Shown: positions 982-64,000 of the stretch, piece after piece
Layout of the letters: the number at the start of each line of letters is the position of its first letter
How positions within the stretch are numbered: the first letter of the stretch is position 1
Virus record (IMG/VR): IMGVR_UViG_3300042387_000948
Span: 124,001 to 188,000 of that record
Strand: one strand, 5' to 3'
DNA length: 64,000 nucleotides
Program-made: the position numbers and the translations under genes
Notes under the pieces: generated by a model
What the model saw: the letters and a program-made list of their open reading frames with translations, nothing else
Told to the model about the DNA's origin: nothing
The model's database searches: none

Positions 982-999
982 AACTTATTTTGTATTTTA

Positions 1000-1031: not shown

Positions 1032-1086
1032 CATCTTTTGTTTTTTATATATGTATATATAAATATAAAGTTTTTGAATAAAACAT

Positions 1087-1120: not shown

Positions 1121-1140
1121 CTTATTTTTCTTATGTTATT

Positions 1141-2166
1141 TTAGTAGAACGGATTCCAATCTAATCCATCATACACATACGGTTTTGGTGTTGGTGAACC
1201 ACTCATAATCAAACTACCAGTTACCGATGGAGTTGGTTTATTACCTACATATTGTGTTAATACTAAAATATTATTTATGTGTAAAGAACCTGATGCTTCT
1301 AAATAAAATACGTTAGGAGATATTACCGCACCACCTGCACCTTCTACATATGTAAAAACACCCCCATTAGTTGTACCGATTGTAGCAACAGACGTACCAG
1401 AACTACCAGAAGTACCGCTTGTACCAGATGTTCCACTTGTACCAGGTAATCCACTAGTTCCATTAAATCCAGATGAACCGGATGTACCATCCGAACCAAA
1501 CCCATTTGTACCATTTGTACCATTTAAACCAGATGTACCAGATGTACCATTACTACCAATACCATTAGTACCATTTGTTCCAGATGAACCGGATGTACCA
1601 GAAGTACCAGCTGCACCAAAAAATCCATTTATACCAGATGAACCTGAAGTTCCTGATGTACCAGTAGAACCAGTTCCACCAGTCACACCACTACTACCAG
1701 ATGTACCAGATGTACCAGATGTACCAGATGTACCAGTAGAACCAGTTCCACTTGTTCCAGAAGTTCCACTTGTTCCAGAAGTACCAGCTCCGCTTGTTCC
1801 AGAAGTTCCACTTGTTCCAGAAGTTCCAGAAGTTCCAAAGTTAGTACCATCTAATCCACTAGTACCACTTGTTCCAGACGTTCCTCGTGTACCACTACTT
1901 CCAGAAGAACCAGAAGTTCCAGAAGTTCCAGAAGTTCCAGAAGTACCGGCAGTACCAGAAGTTCCAGAAGTACCGGCAGTGCCAGCAGTACCCGTTGTAC
2001 CATTTGTTCCAGATGAACCGGATGTACCAGATGTACCGGATGTACCAGATGTTCCCCCAGTACCAGATGTACCAACTCCAATTAATCCATATAAGTAATC
2101 TAAGTTGTCATCCATTTCCAAAGCGGTCAATGGAGCACCTTTTTCTAATCTTTTAACTAATGCCAT
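1141..2166 (-). CDS. Gly-Thr-Ser repeat (collagen-like) virion protein, 341 aa
   Basis: About 230 aa of G-X-Y repeats between a short N-terminal domain (KRLEKGAPLTALEMDDNLDYL) and a C-terminal domain ending YVYDGLDWNPFY. Confidence 0.85.
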   Translation of the reverse strand: MALVKRLEKGAPLTALEMDDNLDYLYGLIGVGTSGTGGTSGTSGTSGTSGSSGTNGTTGTAGTAGTSGTSGTAGTSGTSGTSGTSGSSGSSGTRGTSGTSGTSGLDGTNFGTSGTSGTSGTSGTSGAGTSGTSGTSGTSGTGSTGTSGTSGTSGTSGSSGVTGGTGSTGTSGTSGSSGINGFFGAAGTSGTSGSSGTNGTNGIGSNGTSGTSGLNGTNGTNGFGSDGTSGSSGFNGTSGLPGTSGTSGTSGTSGSSGTSVATIGTTNGGVFTYVEGAGGAVISPNVFYLEASGSLHINNILVLTQYVGNKPTPSVTGSLIMSGSPTPKPYVYDGLDWNPFY

Positions 2167-2227
2167 ATTCTTATTCTATAAAAATCATTCTTATATGGAT
2201 AAATATAAACAAAAGGGAAATTACGGA

Positions 2228-2698: not shown

Positions 2699-2699
2699 T

Positions 2700-9497: not shown

Positions 9498-9804
9498 GTG
9501 TAAATAATTTTTGTTTTTGTTGCATTTCTCTACCTTTCTCTGTCATCTCTCTTGCAAATATCTTAAACACCTTCCCATCATTATGGGTAAATGTTATATT
9601 TGAATGTTCATTATTAGATATAGTGAATTGAACTTGTGGTTCATCATCACCCATATTTTCATCCGTCCATGCAAATACTTGTGGTTGGTTATCATCAAAT
9701 TGAAAACACCACTCACACTCTTCGTATTTATTTGGTTGTTTTATATTGATTGATTGTTTTGGAGAATATTCAATATCCTCAAATAACTCTAATTGTTTTC
9801 CCAT
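9481..9804 (-). CDS. Hypothetical protein
   Basis: 107-aa ORF in operon. Confidence 0.65.
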   Translation of the reverse strand: MGKQLELFEDIEYSPKQSINIKQPNKYEECEWCFQFDDNQPQVFAWTDENMGDDEPQVQFTISNNEHSNITFTHNDGKVFKIFAREMTEKGREMQQKQKLFTHESKN

Positions 9805-44180: not shown

Positions 44181-44381
44181 CCTGCTTTTGATTTACTTTG
44201 TGCAGCTTTCATTTCATCTGCTTCTTTCTTTTTGATATCAACTAATTTTTTAAAATAAAATTTTCTAAGATGTATTGGCATCGTATAAACTTCTGTCCAA
44301 TTGAATCCATTACCAAAATGAACCATTTCCCAAATTTGATTATGAAGTGTTGTTTTATAATCAATTGGCAGGGTAAAAAAA
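44162..44381 (-). CDS. Tail chaperone 'T' extension, probably reached by frameshift
   Basis: Overlapping +1-frame ORF with no ATG near its start; T7 tract at 44375-44381; YTMPIHLRKFY motif. Confidence 0.6.
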
Positions 44382-45152
44382 GCTAACCCCAAATGGGATA
44401 TCTAACGCCTCCGTTTCGCCTGTTATATCTGATGTAAATTCGAATTTTAAGTCTAAATCTGGACTAATTTCTCTAACATATTTTCTAAATGCTTTTGTAT
44501 CTAATGCTAAAAATCCATTTTGAATCCATTTGTTAATAAATCCACCATCCTTATTACCATCTACTGATAAAATCATATATCTAAACCGAGTAGTTACATC
44601 AAAAGATGTTGTGTTTTTTGTTTTATTTACTCTTTCCAATGCTTGATTATCTTTATTAATATCCTGCTCATCACCATGCGTTAATAACTTAAATTCAATT
44701 ACCTTTTTACTTTGTGGTAATGTAAATTTGTACACATTTTCGGCGTTTAATACAGATTCATCAACATCTTTTGTTTGTACTTTTGATAAATCAATTGTAA
44801 CTTCTTGCTTTTCGGATGTAAATGGGTCAGTAATTTCAACCGTATAATCAGCCCCATATCCTAAAATACGAGTAGCCAATAGAATTGCGTTTTTATCACC
44901 AATGAAAATATCATTTATATTTACACCAGGTTCAACAACAACCGATTCAAATAACTTATCTAACACAATACCTTTTTTAATTAAATTTTGAGATGCTAAG
45001 ATATCTTCTTCTCTTGCTGTCATATATTTTATTTCAACCGTTCCTTTACTCAAAGGGTTATCTTTTGAATATACCAATCCTCTTGATGGTAATTCTATAA
45101 TTTCGGTTGGAAATTCAAATTTACTTGTAGTTGCATTTGCACTTTCTGCCAT
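44361..45152 (-). CDS. Tail assembly chaperone / gp26-like hub assembly protein
   Basis: IIELPSRG..Y, IKYMTAREEDIL, GDKNAILLATRI; lies between tube and tape measure. Confidence 0.75.
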   Translation of the reverse strand: MAESANATTSKFEFPTEIIELPSRGLVYSKDNPLSKGTVEIKYMTAREEDILASQNLIKKGIVLDKLFESVVVEPGVNINDIFIGDKNAILLATRILGYGADYTVEITDPFTSEKQEVTIDLSKVQTKDVDESVLNAENVYKFTLPQSKKVIEFKLLTHGDEQDINKDNQALERVNKTKNTTSFDVTTRFRYMILSVDGNKDGGFINKWIQNGFLALDTKAFRKYVREISPDLDLKFEFTSDITGETEALDIPFGVSFFYPAN

Positions 45153-45263: not shown

Positions 45264-45755
45264 TTAATATTCCAAAATAGCGTAATCGTAAGCTATTTCT
45301 AATGTAATATCGGCAGGGTCAGTAGCGTTTGACCAATCCAAGTCTCCAAAATTTGCATTTACTATAAATGCTCCTTTAAGAGTCCATTGTTCAATTACAT
45401 CACCAACAGGTCCTAACATTTTACAAGTTATATCTTTTTTGTAAAAATCAGCATAACCTCTTCTACCAGTGATTGATTCGTGTCCTAAACGTACCCACTC
45501 CATTACAGCTTGAGCCGCAGATGGAACAATAGGGTCAATAAGTGTAAATGTTACGTTAGACCACTCACCCTTTCCTTGCAACTTTCTTTTTATATTAATA
45601 TGGTCTAATGTTACCGTTTCAAATGCAATAGTCGGTCTTTGCGCCACTTTAATAGTATATGCTTGAAGCCCGTCTACATCAATTGTAAAACGATGCTTCA
45701 TTTTAGGTTCGAAGTTCGTATAGAACATCTTGTCAAACTCTAGTATCTCTGCCAT
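45264..45755 (-). CDS. Tail tube protein (gp19-like)
   Basis: FEPKMKHRF, AVMEWVRL, YKKDI, EQWTLKGAF, LEIAYDYA. Confidence 0.92.
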   Translation of the reverse strand: MAEILEFDKMFYTNFEPKMKHRFTIDVDGLQAYTIKVAQRPTIAFETVTLDHINIKRKLQGKGEWSNVTFTLIDPIVPSAAQAVMEWVRLGHESITGRRGYADFYKKDITCKMLGPVGDVIEQWTLKGAFIVNANFGDLDWSNATDPADITLEIAYDYAILEY

Positions 45756-45812: not shown

Positions 45813-48131
45813 TTAAGCGTTAAACGATGCTCCAGTTGGTAAGATGTTGAAATCAATTACGATGAATTCAGCTGTCTTAGCCGGTTGTAAAAATATTTGT
45901 CCTGCTAATACATTTCTATCTATTACATCAGGAGTATTGTTAGTTTCATCCATCACTACTTTGAATGCGTATAAACCTTGTCTTTGTTGAATTGCTTCGA
46001 AATAAGGGTTTACAGTGTTTAAGAATCTATTTCTAGTCGTTGTAGTGTTTTGTTCAAACAATAGGTAACGAGACGTAGATGCGATGAATTTCTTAACAGT
46101 GATTAATAATCTTCTTACGTTGATTCTATCCAATGCTGATGCTTTATCTTGCAATGTCTTCTGTCCGAATGCTACAATACCTTGTCCAGGGAATGAAGCG
46201 ATTGGATTAACTTTGTTTTCGTATAAAGTATCTCTTTCAGAATGTGTTAATCTATTCAATACACTAATTGCTCCAGTGATACCACCTCTATTTAAACCAG
46301 CAGGTGCGAACCATTCTGCTGCCAATCTATCATTAGCTGCAAACACTCCAGGTAATAATACTGAAGGTGGAACACTCATTATTTTATTATTATTATTGTC
46401 AATTGTCTTAACCCAAGGGTAGTAAGTTGCTACATAGTTTGAATCTACTGAATTAGATTGTAAAGTAGTATCTGCTATATCGGAATCAGCTTCACTAAAG
46501 TCAGCTATGTAGAATGTATCTTGTCTATCTTCAACCATATCAATAACCTTAGTAGTTACCGATGGGTGTAGAGAACGAATGATACCAGGAGTTACAACTA
46601 AGTTAATATCATACTCATCCGGATTAGATACAGCGTTTATTGCTTTGAAATATGCAGTTGTACCAGATGATGCTCCATTTGAACAATCAAATCCTTGCGT
46701 ATTTTGTTGAGTGATATCAGTTCCAAGTGCTTTAGCTACCGTTGGGTTCATACCATCGTATCCACCTTGCAATGCTAATACAAACTGTCTTTTAACCATA
46801 TCTGCCGAATTTGAGCCCGTCATTTGATAATTTAATTGAGAATCAAACGCAAATGTTACGTTAGAACCAGTTTGTGCATTTGCAGGAAGTGGTTTTAAAT
46901 ATTGTTTGTTATCAATTGCCACACCAACAGTTTCAAAATCAAATCCAGAATAATATAATGGAGATGATGATGTATTTCCAGTTGAGCTTGTTTGTAATGT
47001 TATAGCAGGTACTAATAACGATTCTGCAGCATTTGTTGCTGTAATTGGGTTTGTATATGCCCCATGTCCAAAAGGTGCTGCTGATATAGGGAATGAACCC
47101 TGAGCTGCTACTTCAACTCTAATATATTTTGAACGATTTTGGTAATCACCATTTTCAGTAATTTTACCATCTTGATTTAATGTAATAAATCTATCACCAA
47201 TTCTTCTTGCAATATAATTTGTAGAAGCAGGGTCTAAGTTTACATTATTAAATGTTTCAAAAACTACTTTTCTTTTATCAGTATCAGAGTATGAACGAAC
47301 AGTTACAGTAAATGTTGAATAATCCGTTGCTCCATCTTCGCCAGCTGCCTTAACATTAGAGATACCAATTTTAAATTTAGTATTATAAACATTACCATGT
47401 CCTAATGTGTGGAAACTGAATAGAGGATATCTAACACCACTAATATCTTGAGATACTACAAATGGTGTTGATGCTACACTTGCCTCATATGCATAATCTT
47501 GAGTTGGTAATACAACTCTAGTTATTACAATGTTATTTCCAGCAGAACCTGTGTAGAATGATGCCAAATTCTCAAAATAAGAATGTACATATGCTGCTTT
47601 ACTTCCAAATGGTGATTCACCAAATACATCAGCTAAATCGTTTGTTGCGGTTGGTAATATTGATGCGGATACGTTTGTACCAGCAACCAATGCATTGATT
47701 ACAAAAGAACCATCTAATGCATCATTACTAACTATACTTGCTCCAGTAAATCCAACACCCTCATCACCAGCTGCAGTTGAGTGTAATACACCAATTAGTT
47801 TAGTTCCTACTGATTGTGCCGATGAACCAGAAGCAAATATTGCTAAAGGTGCTACTTGAGAATATCCAGCAGTACCAGCTACCCTTACAATAGTTGCTGA
47901 ACCAGCTTCTCTAAGGTAGTTTTGTACTGCATATTCAGTATAATATGTCCCATCAGGTGTACCGAAGATATCTTCAAATTCTGATTGAGTTCTTACAATC
48001 GTTGGTACGAATGCCGGTCCTTGCTTAAAAGGTCCTATAAATGCTGCTCCGATTTCACCGATTCCTTGCGCTAAGAAGGATAAATCGTTTTCTCTTGTGA
48101 ATACACCGGGTGATACAATTCTTTCTGCCAT
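45813..48131 (-). CDS. Contractile tail sheath protein
   Basis: IVSPGVFTRENDLS, AAEWFAPAGLNRG, LYENKVNPI, GQKTLQ, RINVRRLL, PAKTAEFI. Confidence 0.96.
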   Translation of the reverse strand: MAERIVSPGVFTRENDLSFLAQGIGEIGAAFIGPFKQGPAFVPTIVRTQSEFEDIFGTPDGTYYTEYAVQNYLREAGSATIVRVAGTAGYSQVAPLAIFASGSSAQSVGTKLIGVLHSTAAGDEGVGFTGASIVSNDALDGSFVINALVAGTNVSASILPTATNDLADVFGESPFGSKAAYVHSYFENLASFYTGSAGNNIVITRVVLPTQDYAYEASVASTPFVVSQDISGVRYPLFSFHTLGHGNVYNTKFKIGISNVKAAGEDGATDYSTFTVTVRSYSDTDKRKVVFETFNNVNLDPASTNYIARRIGDRFITLNQDGKITENGDYQNRSKYIRVEVAAQGSFPISAAPFGHGAYTNPITATNAAESLLVPAITLQTSSTGNTSSSPLYYSGFDFETVGVAIDNKQYLKPLPANAQTGSNVTFAFDSQLNYQMTGSNSADMVKRQFVLALQGGYDGMNPTVAKALGTDITQQNTQGFDCSNGASSGTTAYFKAINAVSNPDEYDINLVVTPGIIRSLHPSVTTKVIDMVEDRQDTFYIADFSEADSDIADTTLQSNSVDSNYVATYYPWVKTIDNNNNKIMSVPPSVLLPGVFAANDRLAAEWFAPAGLNRGGITGAISVLNRLTHSERDTLYENKVNPIASFPGQGIVAFGQKTLQDKASALDRINVRRLLITVKKFIASTSRYLLFEQNTTTTRNRFLNTVNPYFEAIQQRQGLYAFKVVMDETNNTPDVIDRNVLAGQIFLQPAKTAEFIVIDFNILPTGASFNA

Positions 48132-50471: not shown

Positions 50472-53400
50472 TTACTTACCCAATAATGCCTTTAATTCAT
50501 TTATTTGTTGTTGTTGTTCTTTTATTGCCTCAATTAGTAATGCCGTTATTCTTCCATAAGATACCGAATCTGCTTCTCCAGATTTTGTAAAGTTAATAAT
50601 TTCAGGAACAATATCTGCAACTTCTTCCGCAATTACACCAATTTCAGTATCATCCGAACCTTTTCTATTGTAAGTTACACCTCTTAATAATAATACTTTA
50701 TCCAATGATTTATTTAAACTAACTACATTTTCTTTATATCTAATAGATGATGTTTCTGTCAATGATATACAATTCAGTACATTTAAGTTTGTTGTACCAT
50801 CCGGGTCACAATAATACCCACTATTATTTGAATCATAAATTATAGTTGACCAGAATACACCTGAACTTTCGTTCAAGCCATACATTGCTATTTTATACCA
50901 AGCACGTTTTGTATTCCAATAAGATGTATGCCATAAACCTTGAATAGGTCCACCAACTATTTGGATACCATATCCGTTATTATACCCAGCTACATAGTGA
51001 TGGGCCTGAACACCTACATAGTGAGATGTATCACCAGGAGAGTTTGGAATACCACCCCAAGTATCAATAAATCCAGACCCCCAACCAAATGCAGAAATAA
51101 AATCGGTTGTACCCCAACCCATTGTACCTACCCAATAGTTAGAATCTCCAGTATAATCGTTTCTTCTAAAGTTACCTTTGGCTGTCAAACCAATTCTCAT
51201 TTTAGAGTAATCATCAGTTCCTTGCCATCTAGTAGTACCATTTCCATCAAAATAGAATCCGGTATCACTTCTGTCATAAAATATAGCTGAGCGAATATCT
51301 CCCGTATTAATGTATGAACCATCGTTTACGGTTAATGGTACGTTAAAGTAAAAATTAGGTCTATCAGTGTACATGTGTGCATGTCCACTATTCGCAGGTC
51401 CAAACCAAATATATCCATCATTTGTTCTAAATCTAACTCCCCATGTACTTTCCCCATCAAATCTACCAGTATTAGTTGATGTACCAAATCTTAGTTGATT
51501 AAATATAGATGTAGATAACGGGTCTGCGTAATATCCAGTATTATCTCTATCATAAAATATTGGTGCTCTCATCGAATCTCTAGCAAACATATTACCAGAA
51601 GTATCTATACCACCAACCGTTTGACCTGCAGCTTCCGAATAAAAATGGAAAGATTCAGTTCCCACTAATTGCGATGTTACTCTTTTACCAACATACCAAC
51701 CACTACCACTACCACCATTATAACGAACCATAGCTTCGTATCCATTTCCTGGATTGATATAAAGGTATTTGTTTGATGCACCGGTAATAGTTAAATCCCA
51801 AAGAACAGATGTTGAACGAGGGTCTGTATAATAACCGGTATCGTTACTATCGTAGAATATTGGTGCTCTTAATGAGTTACCACCCGTTGCGTAATTGTTA
51901 AATAATACAGTATTGTTTGGATACAACTCCATATTAGTAACTCTAGTACCAGATGTGTTAGTATTGTAGAAATATATATCCCCAGATGAAGCGAATCTCA
52001 TATAACCTTGTCCAAACGAAGTATTTAGTCTACCAAATCCAGAAGGAGAACCACCATCGTTTGTTACGTTATATCCAAATCCAGCTCCTTCCCAACTTAC
52101 ATTAGGTTCAGAACACCACATTTGCAGTTGTACAATACCAGTACCATTTCCATTATTTGCAGCAGGTAATCTATTAATTATTTGAGAAGTAGCATGTGCT
52201 CCACTATTTCTTATACCACCAAATAATTCGGTAAATGTTGCAGGGTCTACATAATAAGCAGTATTTGCCGAATCATAAAACGCAGTTGCATATAATCCAG
52301 TAGCGTTCCAATATCCTAATTCAGCTCTATTATAACGATAGAAATGTAATGCTCCTCCAGCTGCACCAGCTTCAGTTTTTCTGCCACCAATACCAGCATA
52401 TTCTCTAATTGTTCCACCACTATCTTTTAGTTGGAAATGTAAATTAGAACCTACTGATGTTGCTGAGTTATTGTGATTTGTTCTTGTTAAATGTAATGTA
52501 CCATATGTACCATCATCACTAAATGAAGTTCCACCTTTTCTCATATCAAACGCAACAGGTGTCGAATTTGATGTGTGCTCTAATATTACTTCATTTGCAT
52601 TACTAAAGTTTATTGCATTACCAGCGTTTGTTAAATTTAATGTAGCAAATGTTGGAGAATCGGTTGTTTGAATATTTTGATTCATTAAATGAACTTCAGT
52701 TGCACCAGGACCTGTGTTAATATTACCAGCTATTGTTAGTGTAGTACCATCAAATGTAAGATTACTTTCAACTGTTGCGTTTGGTGCAGTTCCGTTTAAT
52801 GTAATTACACCATTATCGGTTGTACCGGTTAAAGCAAGTACTCCAGACGTACCAGATGTACCAGCGCCAGATGTTCCAGACGTACCAGATGTACCAGCAC
52901 CAGATGTACCACTACTTCCAGATGAACCAGATGCGCCGGATGAACCAGATGCGCCGGATGCACCAGAAGTACCACTACTTCCACTACTTCCAGAAGAACC
53001 AGATGCGCCGGATGCACCACTACTACCACTTGTACCACGTGTACCAGACGTACCTGATGTGCCTGAAGTACCACTTGTACCAGAAGTTCCGGATGAACCA
53101 GAAGTTCCGGATGAACCAGAAGTACCACCAGAACCAGAAGTACCAGCTGCGGCTAACCAAGCTGAACCATTATATCGATATATGTTTGTATCTGAAGTAT
53201 TGTAATATATTTGTCCAGCTTTTGTACCAACAGGATTTGTTGCGAATGCTGGAATTCTCAATGAACCACTTATATCCACCGAACCAGTAAATTCTTGTGT
53301 ATCATTTGTTGCATCACCAAATTTATTTGAACCAGATGAGTAAATTAAAGATGATGAAATAAATTGTACTAATATTTGTTGTGCTCGGATTGTACCACCA

Positions 53401-56400
53401 ACAGTTAAGTTACCACTAAGGGTTTCGTTTCCAGTAATAGTAGAATTACCCACTAAAGTTTGAGTTCCAATAACATTTAAGTTTTGAACTCTAGTACTAC
53501 CACTTACATCTAATGCAAATGTTGTTGATGGGTTTTGATTTATACCTAAACTACCAGTAATTATTGTATGTGCGGTTGATATTACAGTATTTCTACCACC
53601 AATAATATCAACTTTCTTTAAATTAGTATTATTTAATAAAGATGTTGGTTGGGTTGCTTGTGCAGTTAGTGTTGTAACTGAACTACCTCTTGTCAAATAT
53701 ACATTAAAAGTTCCGGCAGCACTAGTACAAGCCTGCACAAACACCCATATTTCAGGATTAGTTGCACTTGCAGTATCACCTACTATAAAACTATTTATAG
53801 TTGTATTATTTAATCTACTATATGGATGTACAATTATATCAGTTCCCTGATTATATGCCCCCACTATAAAAGTCACTTCACCACCATATCCATTATTATC
53901 CCAACTACTTTCAATATAAGTTGATAATGTTTGTTGACCATAAGTTGTGTATGAATTATGTATTCTTATATAAGCAGCGGGGTCTCCGGGATTTCTAACT
54001 AATGTTAATTTTGTATTATAAACATTACCACCTCTAATGTACTCACCAGTTATACCTCTGATTATTGTTACATCATTTCGTAATCTAGTAGAACCACTAA
54101 CATCTAATGTAAATCCACCATTTACAGTTGAACCAACGGTTAAGTTACCACTAATGGTTTCGTTTCCAGTTACCGCAAGAGTTGTACCATTAAATGTTAA
54201 GTTTGCCTCAACACTTGCGTTTGGAGCAGTTCCGTTTAATGTAATTACACCATTATCAGTTGTACCTGTCAATGAAAGTAAACCAGAAGAACCAGAAGAA
54301 CCAGATGTACCGCTTGTACCGCTTGTTCCAGATGAACCACTACTTCCAGAAGAACCACTACTACCGCTTGTTCCGGAAGTACCTCGTGTCCCAGATGTTC
54401 CGGATGTTCCAGAAGTACCGCTTGTTCCAGAAGTTCCAGAAGTACCGCTTGTTCCACTAGCACCAGTTGCTCCAGAAGAACCACTACTTCCAGAAGAACC
54501 ACTACTTCCAGATGAACCACTACTACCGCTTGTTCCAGAAGTACCTCGTGTCCCAGATGTTCCAGAAGTTCCAGATGTACCGCTTGTACCACCAGTACCA
54601 GCAGTTCCCATTGTACCACTTGAACCAGATGTTCCAGAAGTACCAGATGTTCCACTTGTGCCGGAAGTACCACTACTACCGCTTGTTCCAGAAGTACCAC
54701 TTGTACCCCCACTACCAGATGTTCCGGCTGCTGCTAACCAAGTTGTACCATTGTATCGATATATGTTTGTATCAGCTGTGTTATAATATATTTGTCCAGC
54801 TTTTGTTCCCGTTGGGTTTGATGGATATGCTGGAATTCTTAATGAACCACTAATATCTACCGAACCAGTGAATTCTTGTGTATCATTTGTTGCATCACCA
54901 AATTTGTTACTCCCACTTGCGTATATTAATGATGATGAAATATATTGTACTAATATTTGTTGTGCTCTGATTGTACCACCAACCGTTAAGTTGCCACTAA
55001 GGGTTTCATTTCCAGTTACCGTTAAAGTAGTACCATCGAATCTAAGATTAGCCTCCGCAGTTACGTTTGGAGATGCACCATTAAGAGTAATTACACCATT
55101 ATCGGTTGTACCACTTATAGATAATGCTCCAGAAGTACCAGATGTTCCGCTTGTACCGCTAGTACCAGATGTACCACTTGTACCCGAAGAACCTCCACTA
55201 CCAGCAGTTCCGTTTGTTCCACTTGAACCCGATGAACCACTACTTCCGCTTGAACCACTACTACCAGATGTTCCGCTTGAACCAGATGTTCCAGATGAAC
55301 CTCCACTTCCTGCAGTTCCGTTTGTTCCAGAAGAACCAGAAGAACCAGATGAACCAGATGTTCCGCTTGTTCCACTTGTTCCGCGTGTACCAGATGTACC
55401 ACTTGTTCCAGATGTTCCAGAAGAACCCCCACTACCAGCAGTTCCACTACCACCACCAGCTCCAGTTACACCACTACTACCACTCGTTCCAGATGTTCCA
55501 GATGTTCCACTTGAACCAGTAGTTCCAGAAGAACCACTACTACCTGATGAACCCGAAGTACCTACAGTTCCAGAAGAACCAGAAGTACCTGATGTACCCG
55601 AAGTACCAGCAGTTCCCGAAGAACCACTACTACCAGATGAACCACTACTACCAGATGAACCACCAGCTCCAGTTATACCACTTGTACCGGAAGTACCAGA
55701 TGTTCCACTTGTACCAGATGTTCCAGAAGTTGCGGATGTACCACTCGTTCCAGAAGAGCCAGTTGTACCAGATGAACCAGTTGTTCCACCACTACCAGAT
55801 GTACCAGATGAACCAGTAGTACCACTACTACCACTTGAACCAGAAGTTCCAGAAGTACCTCCACTACCAGATGTACCAGAAGAACCAGATGAACCAGATG
55901 AACCAGATGAACCAGATGTACCACCACTACCAGCAGTTCCTCTTGTACCACTACTACCGCTTGTTCCAGAAGTACCAGAAGTACCAGAAGTTCCGCTTGT
56001 TCCAGAAGAACCCCCACTACCAGATGTACCACCACTACCAGACGAACCATCCGTACCAGATGAACCAGATGAACCAGATGAACCACCACTACCGCTTGTA
56101 CCACCACTACCGCTTGTACCAGATGAACCACCACTACCGCTTGTTCCAGATGTTCCAGAAGTACCAGAAGTACCAGATGATGCAGCTGCAGTTCTTCTAC
56201 CAACCACACCAGTAGTTGTATTAAGTACTAAGAATTCTTGCGTTGTATTATCGGTAGTTACATTGGTATTATCAAATCTAACACTACCAGAAACTGCTAA
56301 ACTACCACTTATACCTAACGAACCTGTTATTTCTTGTTTATCGTTACTTGCATCACCAAATTTGTTTGAACCAGATGAAAAAATAATTGATGATGATATA

Positions 56401-57200
56401 TAAGTTACTTTTAATTCAGTTGCGTTTATTGTACCACCAACACTTAAATTTCCAGTTATTGTTTCATTACCAGTGATGGTTTGATTTCCAATCACACTTG
56501 AATTACCCACTAAAGTTTGAGAACCAGTTATTCTTAGTGCACCAGATATAAAAGTTGAACCACTTATATCAAATTGAGTTGTTGGTGTTTTTCTTATACC
56601 AACATTTCCACCACCATTTGCTAAAATTACATTAGATGTTGATGCCCTATTAAGATATAAATCTACATTTGTTGAATCTATTCTACCATTAGATGGTGTA
56701 ATTGCAATTGTTCTACCATTAGTAGTTGCGGTTATTGAAATTGAAGTATCGGGTGCGTTTACATTAATACCACCACTAACTATGTTTAAATTTCCACCAT
56801 TTATGTTTTCACTACCACTAATATTTAATGAACCACTTATCGTTGTATTTGTATTTACAACTAATCCTAAATTTGGTGAAATTACTGCTTGTGCTGAACC
56901 TGATTTAATTCTATCCAAATCACCAATTGAAGATGCATTGATATTCGTTAAACCACTACCATTTCCTGTAAATAATGATGCCGATACTGAACCACTAAAT
57001 TGTGAATTTGCATTTATTTGTAATGTTGCTCCGTTTGGAGTCCCAATTTGATAAGTTTGTACGGCCGAACCACTTAGTTTACCAACAACACTTACCGATT
57101 CTGAAGTAGCAGTTAAAATAGATGAACCACTTACAAAAAGTGATACACTATTTACACTATTTTGATTTAACCCATTGGGACTTTTACCGTTGAACTCCAT
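50472..57200 (-). CDS. Giant tail fibre (2242 aa) with GTS repeats and a C-terminal intramolecular chaperone (peptidase S74-like)
   Basis: [10 protein letters not shown] cleavage motif, [31 protein letters not shown] coiled coil. Confidence 0.9.
52845..56180 (-). repeat. Gly-X-Y (GTS/GSS) repeat blocks within the 2242-aa fibre
   Basis: Three blocks at about 55130-56180, 54290-54730 and 52845-53150. Confidence 0.9.
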
Positions 57201-57934: not shown

Positions 57935-58408
57935 TTATGGTTTCTCCGGCCAAACTATACTGAAAGGGTCTGATTGATTTGTAATATCTCTCAAATCTTG
58001 TCTATATGATTGGTAGGAAGTTTTAATACTTTCAGAAACATCCGATAATTGTGTCCAATCACACTCTGATAATAACTGATTTCTTAATTCTCTAATTTCA
58101 CTCCATTTTATTGCTAATCTTAATTCTTTTTCAGAATTAGAAGCATCTATTTGTACCCAATTTTGATAATATATACCATCCGTTAAAGTTGGAGTACCTT
58201 CGGATATGTTTTTAGTATAATCGTTTGGTTTTTGGGTTTGAGTTACTTCAAATACACCAAAATCACTTAATATTTCAGTTGGTATGTTTAACGGAAATGT
58301 ATAAGTTTTATTATCCACTCTAAATTGTTTTAAAGAGTATGGGTATGTTATTTCATTATCTATTATTCTTAAATACATATTATTTGAAAGTTGATGGTAT
58401 TGATGCAA
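57935..58408 (-). CDS. Tail fibre assembly chaperone-like protein
   Basis: IRELRNQLLSECDWTQ...YRQDLRDIT...WPEKP. True start is probably the internal MYLRII. Confidence 0.8.
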   Translation of the reverse strand: MHQYHQLSNNMYLRIIDNEITYPYSLKQFRVDNKTYTFPLNIPTEILSDFGVFEVTQTQKPNDYTKNISEGTPTLTDGIYYQNWVQIDASNSEKELRLAIKWSEIRELRNQLLSECDWTQLSDVSESIKTSYQSYRQDLRDITNQSDPFSIVWPEKP

Positions 58409-59282
58409 AGTTAGTTAATCCAGTACAATTTCTAAATGCACCAGTTCCAAAAGGTGTTGGCGTTCTTAACCAAATTGTAGGAGCAGTTCCACTAATACTA
58501 TTTGTTGTAGATGTCATATAATACACATTTTGAAAAGTTGAAACCGCTGTATTAAAGGTAAATTGAATTACACCAGATGTTATTGCTGCACATTGTCTAA
58601 ATGTTTGTGAAAAGTTTACTACATCAGGACATAAATCAAATAAAGTCAAAGGTACGGTTGTTAATGATACACATCCGTAAAATGTAGATGTAAAATCAGT
58701 TGCTAAAGGTACATTATTAAACAATCCAGAAGGAACTGAAGTTATTTGGGTAAATGAAAATGCACTACTAAATATTTGTGCATTAGGTGAAAAATTAAAC
58801 ATATCAGATGGAATTGATGTTAATCCAGTTCTTGACATAAATCCCGTCCAATCAATCATTTCATCTAAACCATCATATCCACCAACTGCAGATAAAGATG
58901 CGGAGGATGGAATTGATGTTAAAAGATTACATCCTTGAAAGTTTAATCTTCTTAATCCATTTATACCAAATTGTACAATGGAAGTGTATAAACCACGATT
59001 AGATACACTATTATTCACAGTAAATGCGGGCATAAACCCACTTATACTTATTGTATATGAACCTATGGATACATAATTATGTGTTAATGCTATATCCGAT
59101 GATGATGTTATTACATCACTACTACCATCTCCCCAATCGACAACAAAATTTGGAGTCAATCCCTCATAATCAAAAATAGGTAATCTAAATGCTCTGTTGG
59201 CAGTTGTAGTTGTTATTGTAACCTTAAATGGAAACAATTCACTACCTTCACCCGATGATGTTAATCTTCTAAATATTCCCAT
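58380..59282 (-). CDS. PKD-like + BspA/DUF285-type leucine-rich repeat protein
   Basis: VDWGDGS; repeats LTSIPSDMF, ITSVPSGLF, LTTVPLTLF with FxxCxxL. Confidence 0.75.
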   Translation of the reverse strand: MGIFRRLTSSGEGSELFPFKVTITTTTANRAFRLPIFDYEGLTPNFVVDWGDGSSDVITSSSDIALTHNYVSIGSYTISISGFMPAFTVNNSVSNRGLYTSIVQFGINGLRRLNFQGCNLLTSIPSSASLSAVGGYDGLDEMIDWTGFMSRTGLTSIPSDMFNFSPNAQIFSSAFSFTQITSVPSGLFNNVPLATDFTSTFYGCVSLTTVPLTLFDLCPDVVNFSQTFRQCAAITSGVIQFTFNTAVSTFQNVYYMTSTTNSISGTAPTIWLRTPTPFGTGAFRNCTGLTNFASIPSTFK

Positions 59283-59287
59283 AACTT

Positions 59288-62200
59288 TTAATTCATGTTT
59301 AATCCGGTCACAAATCCATAATAAGATGAGCCCCCATCAAATGTGTAAAATACTAATATATCCTCACCAGATGAAGTTAAAATTGGAGGTGTACCACCTA
59401 CCCAATTTACACCACTCCAAGCTAATGAATGTGCTCCTGCGTTTACTGCTAATAATGTAAATCCAAATGCTTTTCCAGCAGGTGCATTTGAGAATGATAT
59501 TGAACCATTTCCAGTAAAAGTTCTCTTAAAGTTGTTAGCAGTTGATAAATCAATTGATGCACCACTACCACTTCCTAAATCAGAGAAAGTTTCTCTGAAA
59601 GTTGTTGATGTTGTAAATCCAGTTGTAGATAAACTAGTTGATAGATTTACACCATTTGTTGCAATTATGTTTAAAGATGTGGGTGAAGTCAAATTAGGAG
59701 TTCCACCGGTATAAATGTTAAATGCTGATGCGGATACGGGTCCAGTTGCTTGAATTGTACCAGTTACAGTTAATGTACTACCATCAAAAGTTAAATTACT
59801 TTCAACCCGTCCATTTGGTGCAGTACCATCTAATGTGATAACACCATTATCAGTAGTTCCTGTCAATGCTAAGAAACCACTTAAACCAGACGAACCAGAT
59901 GTTCCAGCTCCAGATGTACCCGATGTTCCAGAAGTTCCAGATGAACCAAAATTTGTTCCATCTAATCCAGATGAACCAGAAGTTCCAGATGTACCATTTG
60001 TACCTTCACCAGATGTTCCAGACGTTCCAGACGTTCCTGATGTACCACTACTACCAAATAAAGTTCCATCTAAACCAGATGTACCAGACGTTCCCGATGT
60101 ACCATCTGTTCCAGTTGAACCAGATGTACCAGACGTTCCTGATGTACCACTTGTACCAGACGAACCAAAGAATGTTCCATCTAAACCAGAAGTCCCAGAA
60201 GTTCCAGAAGTTCCAGATGTGCCATCTGTCCCAGATGTACCCGAAGTACCACTTGTTCCAGATGTTCCAGACGAACCAAAATATGTACCATCTAAACCAG
60301 ATGTGCCAGAAGTTCCAGATGTGCCAGAAGTTCCATCAGTAGCATCAATTCCAGATGTTCCAGATGTACCACTTGTTCCAGAAGTTCCAAAGAAAGTTCC
60401 GTCTTGTCCACTTGTACCAGATGTACCCGATGTACCAGAAGTTCCATTGGTAGCATCTAAACCAGATGTTCCAGATGTACCAGATGTACCATTTGTTCCA
60501 AAAAAAGTTCCATCTTGTCCACTTGTACCAGATGTACCACTCGTTCCGCTTGTACCATCGGTCCCAACACCAGATGAACCAGAAGTTCCGCTTGTACCAG
60601 ATGAACCAAAGAATGTACCATCTACACCACTTGTACCAGATGTACCACTTTCGCCACTTGTACCAGATGAACCGCTTTCTCCACTTGTACCAGATGAACC
60701 GCTTTCTCCACTTGTACCAGATGAGCCAAAGAATGTTCCATTTAAACCAGAAGTACCGCTTGTACCAGATATACCATCAGTACCACTAACACCAGATGAA
60801 CCAGAAGTACCGCTTTCTCCACTTGTACCAGATGAACCAAAGAATGTTCCATCTAAACCAGAAGTACCGCTTGTACCCGATGTACCAGAAGTTCCATCAG
60901 TCCCAGAAATACCGTTTGTACCACTTTCTCCACTTGTCCCACTTGTTCCAGATGAGCCAAACAATGTTCCATCTAAACCAGAAGTACCAGAAGTCCCAGA
61001 AGTTCCAGATGTACCATCGGTCCCAGATGTACCAGAAGTTCCATCAGTACCAGAAGTTCCATCAGTACCGCTAGTACCAGATGTACCACTTTCACCACTT
61101 GTTCCGCTTGTTCCAGATGTACCACTTGTGCCTGAAGTACCAGATGTACCACTTGTGCCTGAAGTACCAGATGAACCAAATAAAGTTCCATCTAATCCAC
61201 TTGTTCCAGATGTACCAGATGTTCCATCGGTACCCGAAGTACCAGAAGTTCCATCAATACCGCTTGTACCAGATGTACCTGATATACCTGAAGTACCGCT
61301 TGTACCCGAAGTACCAGATGTTCCATCAGTTCCAGAAGTTCCGCTTGTTCCAGAACTACCATCACTACCACTTGTACCAGATGTTCCGCTTGTACCAGAT
61401 GAACCTTCAGCCGATGTACCACTACTACCACTTGTACCAGATGTTCCATCACTACCACTTGTACCATTTGTACCACTTGTCCCACTTGTACCATCACTTC
61501 CAGAAGTTCCGCTTGTTCCGCTTGTTCCAGAAGTACCACTTGTACCTGATGTACCATCAGTTCCGCTTGTACCCGATGTACCATCAGTTCCGCTTGTACC
61601 CGATGTACCATCGATTCCCGAAGTTCCAGAAGTTCCGCTTGTACCAGATGAACCGCTTGTACCAGATGTACCATCAGTTCCGCTTGTACCAGATGTACCA
61701 TCCGTACCGCTTGTACCAGATGTACCGCTTGTACCAGATGTACCATCAGTCCCAACACCAGAAGTTCCAGATGAACCGGAAGTACCATCAGTTCCAGAAG
61801 TTCCACTTGTCCCATCTGTTCCAGAAGTACCGCTTGTACCAGATGTACCATCCGAACCAGTTGTACCACTACTTCCGCTTGTACCAGATGTACCATCAGT
61901 TCCGCTTGTACCAGAAGTACCGCTTGTACCAGATGTACCGCTTGTACCAGATGTACCATCCGAACCAGTTGTACCACTACTACCAGAAGTACCGCTTGTT
62001 CCATCGGTTCCTGAAGTACCAGAAGTACCGCTTGTACCGCTTGTACCAGATGTACCGCTTGTACCAGATGTACCGCTTGTACCAGAAGTACCGCTTGTAC
62101 CAGAAGTACCATTTAACCCAGAAGTTCCCGATGTACCACTTGTTCCGCTTGTTCCACTTATACCACTTGTTCCAGAAGTACCAGAAGTTCCAGAAGTACC

Positions 62201-64000
62201 ATTTGTACCAGAAGTACCAGAAGTACCAGAAGTACCAGATAAACCACCGGAACCAGATGTGCCCGATGTACCAGATGTGCCAGAAGTTCCATCAGAACCA
62301 TCAGCTCCATCACTACCAGATGTTCCACTTGTACCAGAAGTACCCCCACTACCTGCACTACCATCTATTCCATCCGAACCTTTTGCTCCAGATGTTCCGC
62401 TTGTTCCTGATGAACCAGACGTACCAGATGTTCCCGATGTACCATTTAATCCGTTTACACCAGAAGTACCCGAAGTACCAGAAGAACCAGATGTTCCACC
62501 ACTACCAGCAGTACCAGCAGTTCCATTTGTACCACTTGTACCGCTTGTTCCACTTGTACCACGTGTGCCACTACTTCCACTTGTTCCAGATGTTGCGGAT
62601 GTACCTGATGTTCCACTAGTACCAGATGTTCCGCTTGTACCAGCAGTTCCAGATGTTCCAGATGTTCCCCCACTTCCAGATGTACCAGAAGTTCCAGAAG
62701 TTCCAGATGTTCCAGATGTTCCATCCGAACCAGTTGTACCACTACTACCGCTTGTTCCAGAAGTACCGTCCGAACCAGTTGTACCACTACTACCGCTTGT
62801 TCCAGAAGTTCCAGAAGTTCCGCTTGTACCAGATGAACCACTTGAACCGCTACTACCAGATGAACCTGATGAACCACTTGTTCCAGATGTTCCAGATGTT
62901 CCAGATGTTCCCGAAGTACCATCAATTCCACTTGTTCCCGAAGTACCGCTTGTACCAGATGTTCCGCTTGTTCCAGAAGTACCATCCGTACCATTTGTAC
63001 CAGAAGTACCAGAAGTACCAGAAGTACCAGAAGTACCGGCTGCCTGCTGAACATCTCTTGTTTCTAATTTTTTAGTAGTAGGGTCCCAAGTTACAACCAA
63101 TTGAGAGGCTGATGATGTATAAAATTGTTGTATATATACACTACCAGTAATATCTAAACTACCAGTTATTACCAAACTACCACTAAATCTTTGATTACCT
63201 GAATTTAGTAAGAATGATGATGTATCTATACTTTGTGCATTTAATGCAAATTGTGCAATACTTGCAAATGATGAACTAAATACTGTCATCGATGCAGTTT
63301 GTGCATTTGTAATAAATCCTTCCGCAGATAATACCCCACCTAATACATGAGATGCGGTTAGTGCGTAAGATGCGGAAACTGCTAATGAAGCAGTACCAAC
63401 CAACATTGATGCGGTTTGTGCATTTTGTACAAAGTTAGCAGTATCAACATTTGATGCGTTTTGTGCAAATAATGCGTAAGAAGCAGTTCTAGCAAACGAT
63501 GCACTTAATACTGTCATCGATGCGGTTTGTGAATTTAACACAAATTCACCAGCATTTACCGATGCTGATATTAATGCTTCTAAAGATGCCGTATTTAATC
63601 CTATTACACTGCCAGCTATGGTTGCAAAATTAGCGTTTACCGCATGTGATGAGGAAAGTACCGTTCCAATTACTCTATCCGCCTGAATTGTACCATTTAT
63701 TAACGAACCACCACTACCAATTACGATATGTCCACTTGTCAATCCACTAAATGTTACTTGAACAGTGTTATTATCGATTGCTAAAATAGATGCAGGAAGA
63801 ATCATTTCATCTTGCGAACCAGTTCCATACACCTGTACCATTGGGTATCTAATATCCAAATTATGTACAATCGTTACCGAACTTGCGTTACTAAATGGTA
63901 CAGTCTCCGTTAATGAAGTTTCGGGTTGAGGAATATAGTATCCCCTATTCTCATCATATCTTAAAGTATTGTATTCCGCAGATGCTTCGATACCAGCTCC
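59288..64000 (-). CDS. Giant GTS-repeat fibre protein (>1570 aa; 5' end outside the window)
   Basis: Frame stays open from 64000 ([10 protein letters not shown]...VHNLDIRYP), so the track's start at 63859 is not the real start. About 1060 aa of Gly-X-Y; C-terminal IDLSTANNF...WVGGTPP...DILVF domain. Confidence 0.88.
59880..63050 (-). repeat. About 3.2 kb Gly-Thr-Ser codon repeat
   Basis: Degenerate 9-nt periodicity with synonymous variation. Confidence 0.95.

What the first reader, a model, noticed from the sequence alone, without database searches (positions are those of the whole stretch)
59880..63050. About 1060-residue proline-free Gly-X-Y tract with 11 periodic aromatic register breaks
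Seen: almost pure G-T-S/G-T-D/G-S-S. In the distal part (about 59940-61200) the motif G(L/V/Q)(D/N)GT(F/L/Y/N)FG occurs 11 times, each shifting the Gly register by one residue. Synonymous codon scrambling suggests selection on the protein. Inference: either a collagen-like triple helix (about 300 nm at 0.29 nm per residue, longer than the roughly 140 nm tail implied by the 950-aa tape measure) or a polyglycine-II helical bundle with aromatic turns, as in snow-flea antifreeze protein and gp38 tips. Regular Thr/Ser arrays could also order water or ice.
Basis: partly seen in the sequence, partly recalled or inferred. Interest (0 to 1): 0.65.

Follow-up and report, generated by a model that had tools for sequence, protein, structure and literature searches.

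The report
Giant proline-free collagen-like phage fibre
A lake-water jumbo phage encodes a 3322-residue fibre protein with a 1054-residue collagen-type Gly-Thr-Ser shaft; it has no proline or salt bridges, and 11 conserved phenylalanine insertions mark its outer half, an unusual variant of the known phage collagen-like tail fibre.

Summary
On the minus strand, window 59876-63037 encodes 1054 residues of Gly-X-Y: G 350, S 306, T 266, D 48, no Pro, one Lys, one Arg. Eleven G-T-(F/L/Y/N)-F-G one-residue insertions lie at window 59945-61189, mostly 36-40 residues apart.

The gene runs off the window. The full CDS is 3322 aa in a 207-kb myovirus record found in lake-water metagenomes. Pfam Collagen matches at E=2e-117. 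The flanks match phage tail-fibre families, and a tail-fibre assembly chaperone lies two genes downstream.

At least 43 distinct complete relatives in IMG/VR keep three features:
- tract length: median 1051 aa
- number of insertions: median 11
- their place in the C-terminal half

Glycine columns are 98.6% conserved and the inserted Phe is invariant.

Best reading: this is the roughly 300-nm triple-helical shaft of a trimeric tail fibre. The Phe insertions would act as hydrophobic register locks or hinges. The polyglycine-II bundle idea fails on glycine content (33%) and segment length.

This is a new variant of a known kind. It matters mainly for collagen folding, because it lacks both known stabilisers.

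The parts
59288..64000 (-). C-terminal 1570 codons plus stop of the 3322-aa fibre gene. The full CDS is G000:C1:183288-193256, and its start lies 5256 bases beyond the window end.
   Evidence: The frame was walked upstream in the whole genome to an ATG. Translation is P0004. PHROG tail-fibre families match.
63038..64000 (-). Pre-collagen region, residues 1753-2073. It holds a small beta domain (weak match to phrog_21918) and Ala/Ser/Thr-rich repeats of the type TASxxVxSASFAxTASYAL.
   Evidence: No Pfam match and no match in cultured phages. A helical or coiled-coil nature is only a guess from composition.
61217..63037 (-). Proximal 'smooth' part of the Gly-X-Y tract, residues 2074 to about 2680. 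It has no aromatic insertion and its longest uninterrupted run is 92 triplets.
59876..61216 (-). Distal part of the tract, residues about 2681-3127. It carries 11 one-residue insertions G-T-(F/L/Y/N)-F-G, each within the conserved motif SG(L/V/Q)(D/N)[11 protein letters not shown], and shows a 111-bp higher-order repeat.
   Evidence: The inserted Phe is 100% conserved and Gly columns 98.6% conserved across 11 homologues.
59747..59875 (-). Post-collagen module, residues 3128 to about 3170: [38 protein letters not shown]. It also follows each of the four Gly-Thr-Ser blocks of the neighbouring fibre P0003.
   Evidence: Its role as a trimerisation or nucleation cap is inferred, not tested.
59291..59620 (-). 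C-terminal beta-sandwich tip domain, residues about 3213-3322.
   Evidence: The AlphaFold2 model has pLDDT about 90 here. The best structural matches are phage spike and fibre domains at Z 6-7.5, which is not decisive. tblastn matches annotated tail-fibre tips in cultured phages at 33-41% identity. PHROG 7760 and 3904, both tail fibre, match.
59835..63050 (+). Shadow ORF of 1071 aa (PDVPEVP...) on the opposite strand. It is not a gene.
   Evidence: All neighbouring genes are on the minus strand. Only the minus frame continues into conserved flanking domains.
58380..59282 (-). 300-aa ORF directly downstream. It looks like a leucine-rich repeat protein by eye and may be a fibre accessory protein.
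   Evidence: It matches phrog_9915, of unknown function, and has no Pfam match.
57935..58408 (-). Tail-fibre assembly chaperone, 157 aa.
   Evidence: Pfam PF16778 Phage_tail_APC at E=4.8e-14. PHROG 4912, 188 and 8746, all tail fibre assembly.
50472..57200 (-). Second collagen-like fibre, P0003, 2242 aa. It has four proline-free Gly-Thr-Ser blocks without aromatic insertions and a C-terminal Peptidase_S74 intramolecular chaperone domain.
1141..2166 (-). Third collagen-like protein, P0009, 341 aa, with one GLDGTNFG insertion. Glycosyltransferase genes flank it at 349-981 (GT2) and 3996-5381 (GT1/GT4).

Best explanation
The tract is the collagen-like shaft of a giant homotrimeric tail fibre, 3322 aa per chain, of an uncultured freshwater jumbo myovirus.

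Shown:
- It is a Gly-X-Y sequence of 351 triplet lengths. Gly is under near-absolute constraint, while X (Thr>Ser) and Y (Ser>Asp>Asn) drift.
- It sits between fibre-type N-terminal repeats and a conserved C-terminal module plus beta-sandwich tip.
- It lies in the tail gene block, next to a tail-fibre assembly chaperone.
- Its length, composition and insertion pattern are conserved across a large family of IMG/VR phages.

Inferred:
- Three parallel chains are brought together by the C-terminal module and tip, with the chaperone's help. They zip from the C-terminus into a triple helix about 300 nm long. The helix acts as a long, thin tether that carries the receptor-binding tip far from the virion.
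- The chain has no proline and no Lys/Arg-Asp/Glu pairs. Stability must therefore come from sheer length, end clamps, the Ser/Thr hydroxyl and water network, and possibly O-glycosylation by the phage's own glycosyltransferases.
- The 11 insertions each place Leu/Val, an aromatic or aliphatic residue and an invariant Phe from three chains at one level. They probably form small hydrophobic knots every 10-12 nm in the C-terminal half. These knots would fix chain register in an otherwise degenerate (GTS)n sequence and clamp the helix where folding starts. They could also make that half segmentally flexible.
- The knot function is the least certain step.
For: Sequence and family:
- Pfam Collagen matches at E=2e-117. 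PHROG 'tail fiber' and 'collagen like minor tail' families match.
- Gly is 33.2% of the tract. Hydrophobic residues occur only at X and Asp/Asn only at Y.
- Across homologues, Gly columns are 98.6% conserved, X 64%, Y 79% and the inserted Phe 100%.

Conservation of the pattern:
- Spacing between insertions changes in steps of three residues. Of the spacings, 79% are 3n+1 and 20% are 3n, the latter where a G-x-G deletion intervenes. This is the expected pattern for a rod where whole triplets can be gained or lost.
- 43 distinct complete relatives have a median tract of 1051 aa and a median of 11 insertions. The first insertion lies at a median 0.53 of the tract.
- The tract diverges faster than the tip domain (dS 0.75-0.87 against 0.25-0.30) yet keeps these features.

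Trimer and fibre context:
- The paralogue P0003 has the same Gly-Thr-Ser blocks and the same post-collagen module, and ends in a Peptidase_S74 trimer chaperone domain.
- The tip domain matches annotated tail-fibre tips of cultured phages.
- A chaperone gene lies two ORFs downstream.
- The gene order is adaptor, sheath stabiliser, three giant fibres, sheath, tube, hub.

Literature:
- Phage collagen domains are trimeric, with C-terminal trimerisation domains (PMC3368898).
- Collagens fold from the C-terminus and concentrate register-setting clamps there (PMC11923368).
Against: - No direct test of trimer or triple helix was possible.
- The tract lacks both known sequence stabilisers, with 0 Pro and 0 KGE/KGD.
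- (Gly-Pro-Thr)10 is a random coil unless glycosylated (PMC11923368). A Gly-Thr-Ser helix may therefore be marginal or need modification.
- The proximal half has runs of up to 92 triplets with no knots. This weakens the idea that knots are needed for stability.
- AlphaFold2 monomer models put short beta strands at every aromatic motif, although at pLDDT of only 42-50. This hints at some other local structure.
- Attachment to the baseplate rather than the neck is not established.
Confidence: 0.65

Rival explanations
1. The tract is a flexible, largely unfolded Ser/Thr-rich tether, possibly heavily O-glycosylated like a mucin. It is not a stable triple helix. The Gly periodicity would be a legacy of 9-bp repeat expansion, and the fibre would act as an entropic leash or brush.
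For: There are no Pro and no ion pairs. The literature reports that Thr-containing collagen peptides can be unfolded without glycosylation. AlphaFold2 gives pLDDT about 27-35. The genome has at least six glycosyltransferase-domain ORFs and four FkbM methyltransferases.
Against: Gly columns are 98.6% conserved while X and Y drift. Codons are scrambled and dS is about 0.8. Gly is therefore selected, not a recent DNA repeat. Insertion spacing keeps the triplet register. A leash would not need Gly at every third residue or an invariant inserted Phe. Low pLDDT is expected for any collagen chain modelled as a monomer.
Confidence: 0.15
2. The distal 440 residues fold back on themselves or associate side by side through the aromatic motifs. 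This would be either a polyglycine-II-type antiparallel bundle with aromatic turns, or a ladder held by beta pairing of the motifs. The distal part would then be a compact body, not a 125-nm rod.
For: The period is regular, at about 37 aa. AlphaFold2 monomer models place a 6-8-residue strand at nine of the motifs, with a local pLDDT rise to 42-50. Asp/Asn-Gly precedes each insertion.
Against: Gly is 33%, and known PGII bundles need about two thirds. Neighbouring units differ in length (34, 37, 40, 43, 46, 49, 73) within one protein and between homologues, which suits a rod better than packed equal strands. Asp/Asn at Y followed by Gly is common throughout the tract, including where no insertion follows. 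The model confidence is far below any usable level.
Confidence: 0.1
3. The exposed Phe pairs and hydroxyl arrays of the distal half are a working surface in their own right. They could be multivalent low-affinity binding sites for host polysaccharide or mucilage, docking sites for another virion protein, or an ice- or water-ordering surface.
For: The insertions are confined to the tip-proximal half. The invariant Phe and flanking GSSGTSG are conserved. The nearest cultured relative infects Microcystis, with sheath identity of 48%.
Against: There is no direct evidence. This reading is compatible with, rather than opposed to, the triple-helix reading. In a triple helix the Thr side chains form a helical array, not the flat array that known ice-binding faces use (own knowledge). 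The host is unknown.
Confidence: 0.08
4. The tract length is an assembly artefact of a short-read metagenome.
For: No Logan contig spans the tract; pieces reach at most 434 bp. Many repeat-induced joints appear in the de Bruijn graphs.
Against: Three other assemblies are identical over 6609 nt. 43 distinct relatives have tracts of median 1051 aa. Codon scrambling limits exact repeats to 47 nt. The frame is intact through 1054 codons.
Confidence: 0.02

Closest known systems
Collagen-like tail-fibre proteins of E. coli O157 prophages (EPclA-D; Ghosh et al. 2012, PMC3368898) and 'bacteriophage collagen' (Smith et al. 1998, cited in PMC1079782)
   Same: Both are phage side or tail fibre proteins with a Gly-X-Y domain followed by a C-terminal trimerisation or tip domain, and with an Ala/Ser-rich region N-terminal to the collagen part. 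The Gly-X-Y domain is shown experimentally to be a trimeric triple helix in EPclA.
   Different: The EPcl collagen domains reach at most 322 aa. About half of their X positions are Pro, they have many charged pairs and no aromatic residues, and they carry at most one GxPGGPxG interruption. Here the tract is 1054 aa with 0 Pro, 2 basic residues and 11 conserved Phe insertions.
Cyanomyovirus P-SSM2 orf028, a Gly-X-Y tail-fibre-like protein (Sullivan et al. 2005, PMC1079782), and the collagen-like protein of Microcystis phage Mel-JY01 (P0005)
   Same: These are Ser/Thr-rich Gly-X-Y repeats in fibre genes of aquatic myoviruses. The Mel-JY01 sheath is the closest cultured match, at 48% identity.
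   Different: Pro is among the common X/Y residues of P-SSM2 orf028, and Mel-JY01 P0005 has Pro and regular GTR triplets. Neither shows the periodic G-T-x-F-G insertion. The Mel-JY01 protein has a different C-terminus.
Bacillus anthracis BclA and other Thr-rich bacterial collagens
   Same: They are collagen-like regions without hydroxyproline that use Thr, with a C-terminal trimerising domain. Thr O-glycosylation is proposed to stabilise them.
   Different: BclA repeats are Gly-Pro-Thr, with Pro at X and Thr at Y. They are far shorter and belong to a spore surface, not a virion (own knowledge).
Vertebrate fibrillar collagen (type I) and interrupted non-fibrillar collagens (type IV, C1q, MBL)
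   Same: The length is nearly that of the type I helix (chains of 1028-1056 residues in PDB 3hqv). Interruptions of the Gly register act as kinks or flexible sites in non-fibrillar collagens. Register-setting clamps are concentrated near the C-terminus.
   Different: Animal collagens rely on Pro/Hyp and KGE/KGD salt bridges. Here both are absent, and the interruptions are one uniform, conserved, hydrophobic one-residue insertion.
Polyglycine-II bundles (snow flea antifreeze protein, phage S16 gp38 tip)
   Same: Both have a tripeptide periodicity with Gly. gp38 is also a phage fibre tip.
   Different: Bundles need roughly two thirds Gly and short helices joined by turns. Here Gly is 33%, and segments of 29-276 residues run without a turn signal.

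Membership tests
Collagen triple helix repeat (Pfam PF01391) | Gly at every third residue over long runs, with a match to the family model above its curated cut-off | tested here: met
   383 bits against a cut-off of 27.2, E=2e-117. 322 of 349 Gly-Gly intervals equal 3.
Collagen triple helix repeat (Pfam PF01391) | Three parallel chains form the helix (homotrimer) | not testable with these tools
The only support is indirect: the paralogue P0003 carries a Peptidase_S74 trimer chaperone domain and the same post-collagen module.
Collagen triple helix repeat (Pfam PF01391) | Known sequence stabilisers: imino acids at X/Y, or Lys-Gly-Glu/Asp interchain salt bridges | tested here: not met
   0 Pro, 1 Lys, 1 Arg and 0 KGE/KGD/RGE/RGD. 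This does not exclude a helix, but it is the main departure from known collagens.
Collagen triple helix repeat (Pfam PF01391) | Positional asymmetry of X and Y, with bulky hydrophobic residues at X | tested here: met
   X holds T, S, L, I, E, V, A, Q. Y holds S, D, N, T, G, A, R, K. All L/I/V are at X and all D/N at Y.
Phage tail fibre | Encoded in the tail module, with fibre-family matches outside the low-complexity part and an adjacent assembly chaperone | tested here: met
   The C-terminal 191 aa match PHROG 7760 and 3904 (tail fibre) and 19200 (virion structural). tblastn matches annotated tail-fibre tips. The PF16778 chaperone lies at 57935-58408. Neck, sheath, tube and hub genes flank the block.
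Phage tail fibre | Presence in the virion and attachment to the baseplate | not testable with these tools
   The N-terminal 700 aa match no PHROG family. The gene position between neck genes and sheath would also allow a collar or whisker fibre.
Polyglycine-II helical bundle (snow flea AFP, gp38 type) | About half to two thirds Gly, so that two faces of each helix are Gly | tested here: not met
   Gly is 33.2% here and 31-34% in 43 relatives. The criterion comes from 10.1101/2023.11.25.568672.
Polyglycine-II helical bundle (snow flea AFP, gp38 type) | Short helices of similar length joined by turns into a compact domain | tested here: not met
   Units of 34 to 73 residues differ between neighbours, and the proximal run is 92 triplets. 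The AlphaFold2 monomer models show no confident compact fold, with mean pLDDT 35.

The most novel reading that the evidence does not exclude
The conserved G-T-x-F-G one-residue insertions would be a third kind of collagen 'clamp'. They would be hydrophobic knots that set chain register and hold a proline-free, salt-bridge-free (Gly-Thr-Ser)n triple helix of fibrillar-collagen length together, perhaps aided by phage-encoded O-glycosylation of Thr/Ser. If so, this phage family shows that neither imino acids nor KGE/KGD ion pairs are needed for a 300-nm collagen. It would also supply a simple, fully genetically encoded design for long recombinant collagen rods.
Probability: 0.25. Interest if true: 0.75.

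Novelty: new variant of a known kind. Interest (0 to 1): 0.55.

Why it matters
Collagen-like tail fibres of phages have been known since 1998, so the kind is not new. The variant is extreme.
- Its length equals that of vertebrate type I collagen.
- It has no proline and no basic residues to pair with its 56 acidic ones.
- It carries a uniform aromatic insertion repeated about 11 times in the C-terminal half.

All of this is conserved in dozens of uncultured lake phages.

Current accounts of collagen folding name imino acids, Thr glycosylation and Lys-Glu/Asp salt bridges as what keeps long chains in register (PMC11923368). If this tract does form a triple helix, it is a natural counter-example and makes the question directly testable with a bacterial expression construct. 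It would also be a source of simple long-rod biomaterials.

For phage biology it points to jumbo myoviruses that carry three giant fibres of 2242-3322 aa. Such fibres give a very large capture radius, which is relevant to host finding in dilute lake water.

Tried and rejected
1. Trimer prediction. Three copies of the last 330 residues were submitted.

Disclosure: a monomer fold of the same 330 residues was already running. Its result is low-confidence and carries little weight here.

2. Fold searches of the tip domain. Foldseek against the PDB found nothing at E<=0.001. VIA-align gave only Z 6-7.5 matches to phage spike and fibre domains, which is suggestive but not decisive.

3. PDB sequence searches. 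These only recover animal collagens and a model repeat chain (8zxl) through the Gly period, so they are uninformative.

4. Logan contigs of four lake-water runs. They tile the tract only in pieces of at most 434 bp, so the total length is not independently spanned.

5. dN/dS in the tract. The alignment of a low-complexity repeat is not position-by-position orthologous. The values (about 0.3) are only a rough sign of constraint, and the column conservation is the better measure.

6. Other searches.
- A search of cultured phages with the pre-collagen region found no match.
- No paper on Mel-JY01 is in the library.
- The large protein searches (search for homologous proteins, the search of protein representatives) were not run, as IMG/VR scans had already given 90 distinct relatives.


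Full report
**What is there**

All long ORFs around the finding lie on the minus strand. The minus-strand frame from window 59288 runs open to the window end at 64000.

The window is G000:C1:124001-188000 of a 207,029-bp IMG/VR virus record that CheckV rates complete. Walking the frame upstream in the whole genome gives a CDS at G000 183288-193256 of 3322 codons, starting at an ATG (protein P0004).

The plus-strand ORF at 59835-63050 (1071 aa, PDVPEVP...) is the mirror image of the repeat and not a gene.

**The observation**

Residues 2074-3127 (window 59876-63037) form one Gly-X-Y tract of 1054 residues.
- Composition is G 350, S 306, T 266 and D 48, with no proline, one Lys and one Arg. Net charge is -54.
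- Of 326 regular triplets, 210 are GTS, 32 GSS and 20 GTD.
- X is T, S, L, I, E, V, A or Q. Y is S, D, N, T, G, A, R or K. Every bulky hydrophobic residue is at X and every Asp/Asn is at Y.
- Eleven Gly-Gly intervals have length 4, written G-T-(F/L/Y/N)-F-G, each preceded by G(L/V/Q)(D/N). They all lie between residues 2690 and 3104 (window 61189-59945), with spacings of 73, 40, 37, 40, 36, 37, 37, 37, 37 and 36.
- There are also four G-x-G deletions, three Gly-to-Ala positions and one five-residue interval.
- Tandem Repeats Finder reports the 9-bp unit (348 copies, 61% match) and a 111-bp super-repeat (10 copies, 72% match).
- The 212 GTS units are written in 26 different ways. The longest exact DNA repeat is 47 nt, whereas the longest exact peptide repeat is 47 aa.

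The corrections are the strand, the true size of the gene and the additional minor breaks.

**Is the length real?**

- Three other IMG/VR contigs from different metagenome assemblies are identical to the window over all 6609 nt available.
- 24 lake-water metagenome runs hold 69-93% of the sampled 31-mers of this stretch.
- Logan contigs of four of these runs match exactly but break inside the repeat. The longest piece is 434 bp, and none spans the tract.
- The strongest argument is comparative. Relatives with different sequences have tracts of nearly the same length (below).
- Long reads would still be needed for proof.

**Context**

The phage is a myovirus.
- The sheath is at window 45813-48131, the tube at 45264-45755 and the baseplate hub at 44361-45152.
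- In the direction of transcription the order is:
  1. head-tail adaptor
  2. sheath-stabiliser-like protein
  3. a 3067-aa fibre
  4. a 290-aa ORF
  5. P0004
  6. a 300-aa ORF
  7. a 157-aa tail-fibre assembly chaperone (PF16778, E=4.8e-14)
  8. two small ORFs
  9. a 2242-aa fibre (P0003)
  10. five small ORFs
  11. sheath
- P0003 has four proline-free Gly-Thr-Ser blocks. Each is followed by the same roughly 40-residue module that follows the tract in P0004 ([25 protein letters not shown]). P0003 ends in a Peptidase_S74 intramolecular chaperone domain. By established knowledge of endosialidase and T5 fibre, that domain drives trimer assembly.
- A third collagen-like protein of 341 aa lies at window 1141-2166, between a GT2 and a GT1/GT4 glycosyltransferase.
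- The genome has at least four GT2 and two GT1 domain ORFs and four FkbM-type methyltransferases.
- The closest cultured phage by sheath is Microcystis phage Mel-JY01, at 48% identity. It also encodes a Gly-Thr-Ser collagen-like protein.

**Family**

- A scan of IMG/VR with the C-terminal 203 residues gave 30 loci.
- After removing duplicates there are 92 distinct tracts. Of these, 43 are complete with both flanks:
  - length is 618-1184 aa, median 1051
  - insertions number 8-17, median 11
  - the first insertion lies at a median 0.53 of the tract
  - Gly is 31-34%, Pro 0-8, and Lys+Arg 0-9
- Complete ORFs are 3370-4045 aa.
- Insertion spacings peak at 37 (185 cases), 40 (167) and 43 (90). 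79% are of the form 3n+1 and 20% of the form 3n, the latter where a G-x-G deletion lies between.
- In an alignment of 11 distal tracts, Gly columns are 98.6% identical to the window sequence, X 64% and Y 79%. In the insertion, the Thr is 98%, the middle residue 37% and the last Phe 100%.
- Against the closest lineage, the tract shows dS 0.75-0.87 and the tip domain 0.25-0.30. The alignment of such a repeat is not strictly orthologous. The tract turns over quickly while keeping length, composition, Gly register and insertion pattern.
- This sample was selected by the motif and by the tip domain, so it does not measure how common the design is among all phages.

**Structure**

Pfam Collagen matches at E=2e-117. 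PHROG families named tail fibre and collagen-like minor tail match the tract, and tail-fibre families match the C-terminal 191 residues.

The last roughly 110 residues fold in AlphaFold2 as a beta sandwich with pLDDT about 90. Its best structural neighbours are distal or linking domains of phage spikes and fibres (Pa223 capsid spike, KP1 baseplate protein, CBA120 TSP4) at Z 6-7.5, which is suggestive only. tblastn finds the same domain at the ends of annotated tail-fibre proteins of cultured phages at 33-41% identity.

The collagen part has pLDDT about 27 as a monomer, as expected for a chain that needs partners.

A monomer model of the distal tract has mean pLDDT 35. It places a short strand at nine of the aromatic motifs, with pLDDT 42-50 against about 30 between them. 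I take this only as a hint that the motifs are local structured islands. I report it for transparency and give it little weight.

**Triple helix or polyglycine-II bundle?**

A survey of PGII bundles states the rule. One third glycine gives the collagen triple helix, about two thirds gives two-layer PGII sheets such as the snow flea protein, and all-glycine gives the honeycomb (10.1101/2023.11.25.568672).
- This tract has 33% Gly.
- Its segments between insertions are long and unequal, at 34-73 residues.
- The proximal half runs for up to 92 triplets without any break.
- Asp/Asn at Y followed by the obligatory Gly occurs all along the tract and is no special turn signal.

The bundle reading is therefore not supported.

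**How it probably works**

Phage collagen domains that have been studied are homotrimers with C-terminal trimerisation domains (PMC3368898). Collagens nucleate at the C-terminus and zip towards the N-terminus (PMC11923368).

I infer that the post-collagen module and tip, helped by the downstream chaperone, bring three chains together. The tract would then zip into a rod of about 300 nm (1054 x 0.286 nm). It would have a smooth proximal 176 nm and a distal 125 nm marked every 10-12 nm by an insertion.

The recent 'folding code' work argues that long collagens avoid register slips and local unfolding through KGE/KGD salt bridges, half of which lie in the C-terminal quarter. It also reports that KGD is the most over-represented triplet in viral collagens. 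This tract has none.

Each insertion would instead bring nine hydrophobic side chains to one level of the trimer: Leu/Val/Gln at X, then x and Phe, from three chains. Their slightly irregular spacing makes any slipped register mismatch. They sit in the half where folding starts.

That is my case for a register-locking, clamping role. It is an analogy, not a result. The knot-free proximal half argues that knots are not needed for stability as such. Hinge-like flexibility, binding of host polysaccharide and docking of another protein are equally open.

Stabilisation by O-glycosylation is plausible given the phage's glycosyltransferases. However, those enzymes could serve other ends.

**Comparison and novelty**

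The kind is known, as 'bacteriophage collagen' (Smith 1998, cited in PMC1079782).
- Ser/Thr/Pro-rich Gly-X-Y fibres occur in cyanomyovirus P-SSM2.
- The E. coli prophage collagens have a longest domain of 322 aa, Pro at about half of X positions and no aromatic residues.

What differs here:
- the tract is more than three times longer and equals fibrillar collagen in length
- proline and ion pairs are completely absent
- a uniform, conserved aromatic one-residue insertion is repeated about 11 times in the C-terminal half
- all of this is conserved in a large uncultured family

No cultured phage in the held collection has the pre-collagen region or more than the last roughly 90 residues of the tip.

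I rate it a new variant of a known kind, of moderate to good interest. The interest lies mainly in collagen biophysics and biomaterials, and in the biology of jumbo-phage fibres.

Noticed in passing
L162 (PP395634.1, Microcystis phage Mel-JY01) 1-3052: The plus-strand frame 2-3052 encodes a Gly-Thr-Ser collagen-like protein (P0005) that runs off the start of the record. The GenBank record instead annotates opposite-strand 'hypothetical proteins' WWT39286 and WWT39287 over the repeat, which are probably shadow ORFs.
   Followed up: partly
window 349-981 and 3996-5381; G000 80.9, 110.2, 114.6, 116.4, 117.9 and 122.9 kb: The genome has at least four GT2 and two GT1 glycosyltransferase-domain ORFs and four FkbM-type methyltransferases. 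Most cluster at G000 110-129 kb around the 341-aa collagen-like gene (window 1141-2166). This may be a virion glycosylation system.
   Followed up: partly
L010:963-10166 (G000 194219-203422), window 59288 to beyond the window end, and window 50472-57200: Three giant fibre genes (3067, 3322 and 2242 aa) lie in a row between the neck genes and the sheath gene. The 3067-aa one matches PHROG 4527 and 5342 (tail fibre) and has no collagen tract.
   Followed up: partly
window 50472-57200: P0003 carries four Gly-Thr-Ser blocks, each capped by the same roughly 40-residue module ([27 protein letters not shown]) that caps the tract of the finding. Two blocks are preceded by a repeated '[29 protein letters not shown]' segment. 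The protein ends in a Peptidase_S74 chaperone domain.
   Followed up: partly
window 9804-11018 and 5385-5936: A DruA-like protein (PF14236, Druantia defence, E=1.5e-20) is encoded by the phage. A weak Acb1-like (anti-CBASS) match of 24.6 bits falls below the cut-off of 27.
   Followed up: no
window 58380-59282: The 300-aa ORF directly after the fibre gene has a 'VVDWGDGSS...THNY' segment followed by repeats of the type L..IPS..F......L.S....F..C..LT.VP. These look like BspA-type leucine-rich repeats. It has no Pfam match and matches only phrog_9915, of unknown function.
   Followed up: partly
P0004 residues about 830-960 and 1180-1300 (outside the window, L009): Two inserted domains within the N-terminal fibre repeats carry motifs such as GHPFWIKT...YYNCQFHSSMAGTIII, reminiscent of small cupredoxin-like beta domains. 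The N-terminal 1750 residues are otherwise built of repeats of about 45 aa of the type ASGSxTASxSPxxGFxV. Pfam gave only a marginal Chlorovirus glycoprotein repeat match (29.8 bits).
   Followed up: no
window 59945-61189 (model m66f8b7d044d5): The AlphaFold2 monomer model places a 6-8-residue beta strand at nine of the eleven aromatic insertion motifs. pLDDT rises locally to 42-50, against about 30 between the motifs.
   Followed up: no
L019-L036 and L042-L121 (IMG/VR relatives): In several lineages the last three or four interruptions before the C-terminal module change type, to GTNAPGFSSG or GTSFYGVTSG. Their spacing also shortens, to 33, 27, 24 and 21 residues.
   Followed up: no
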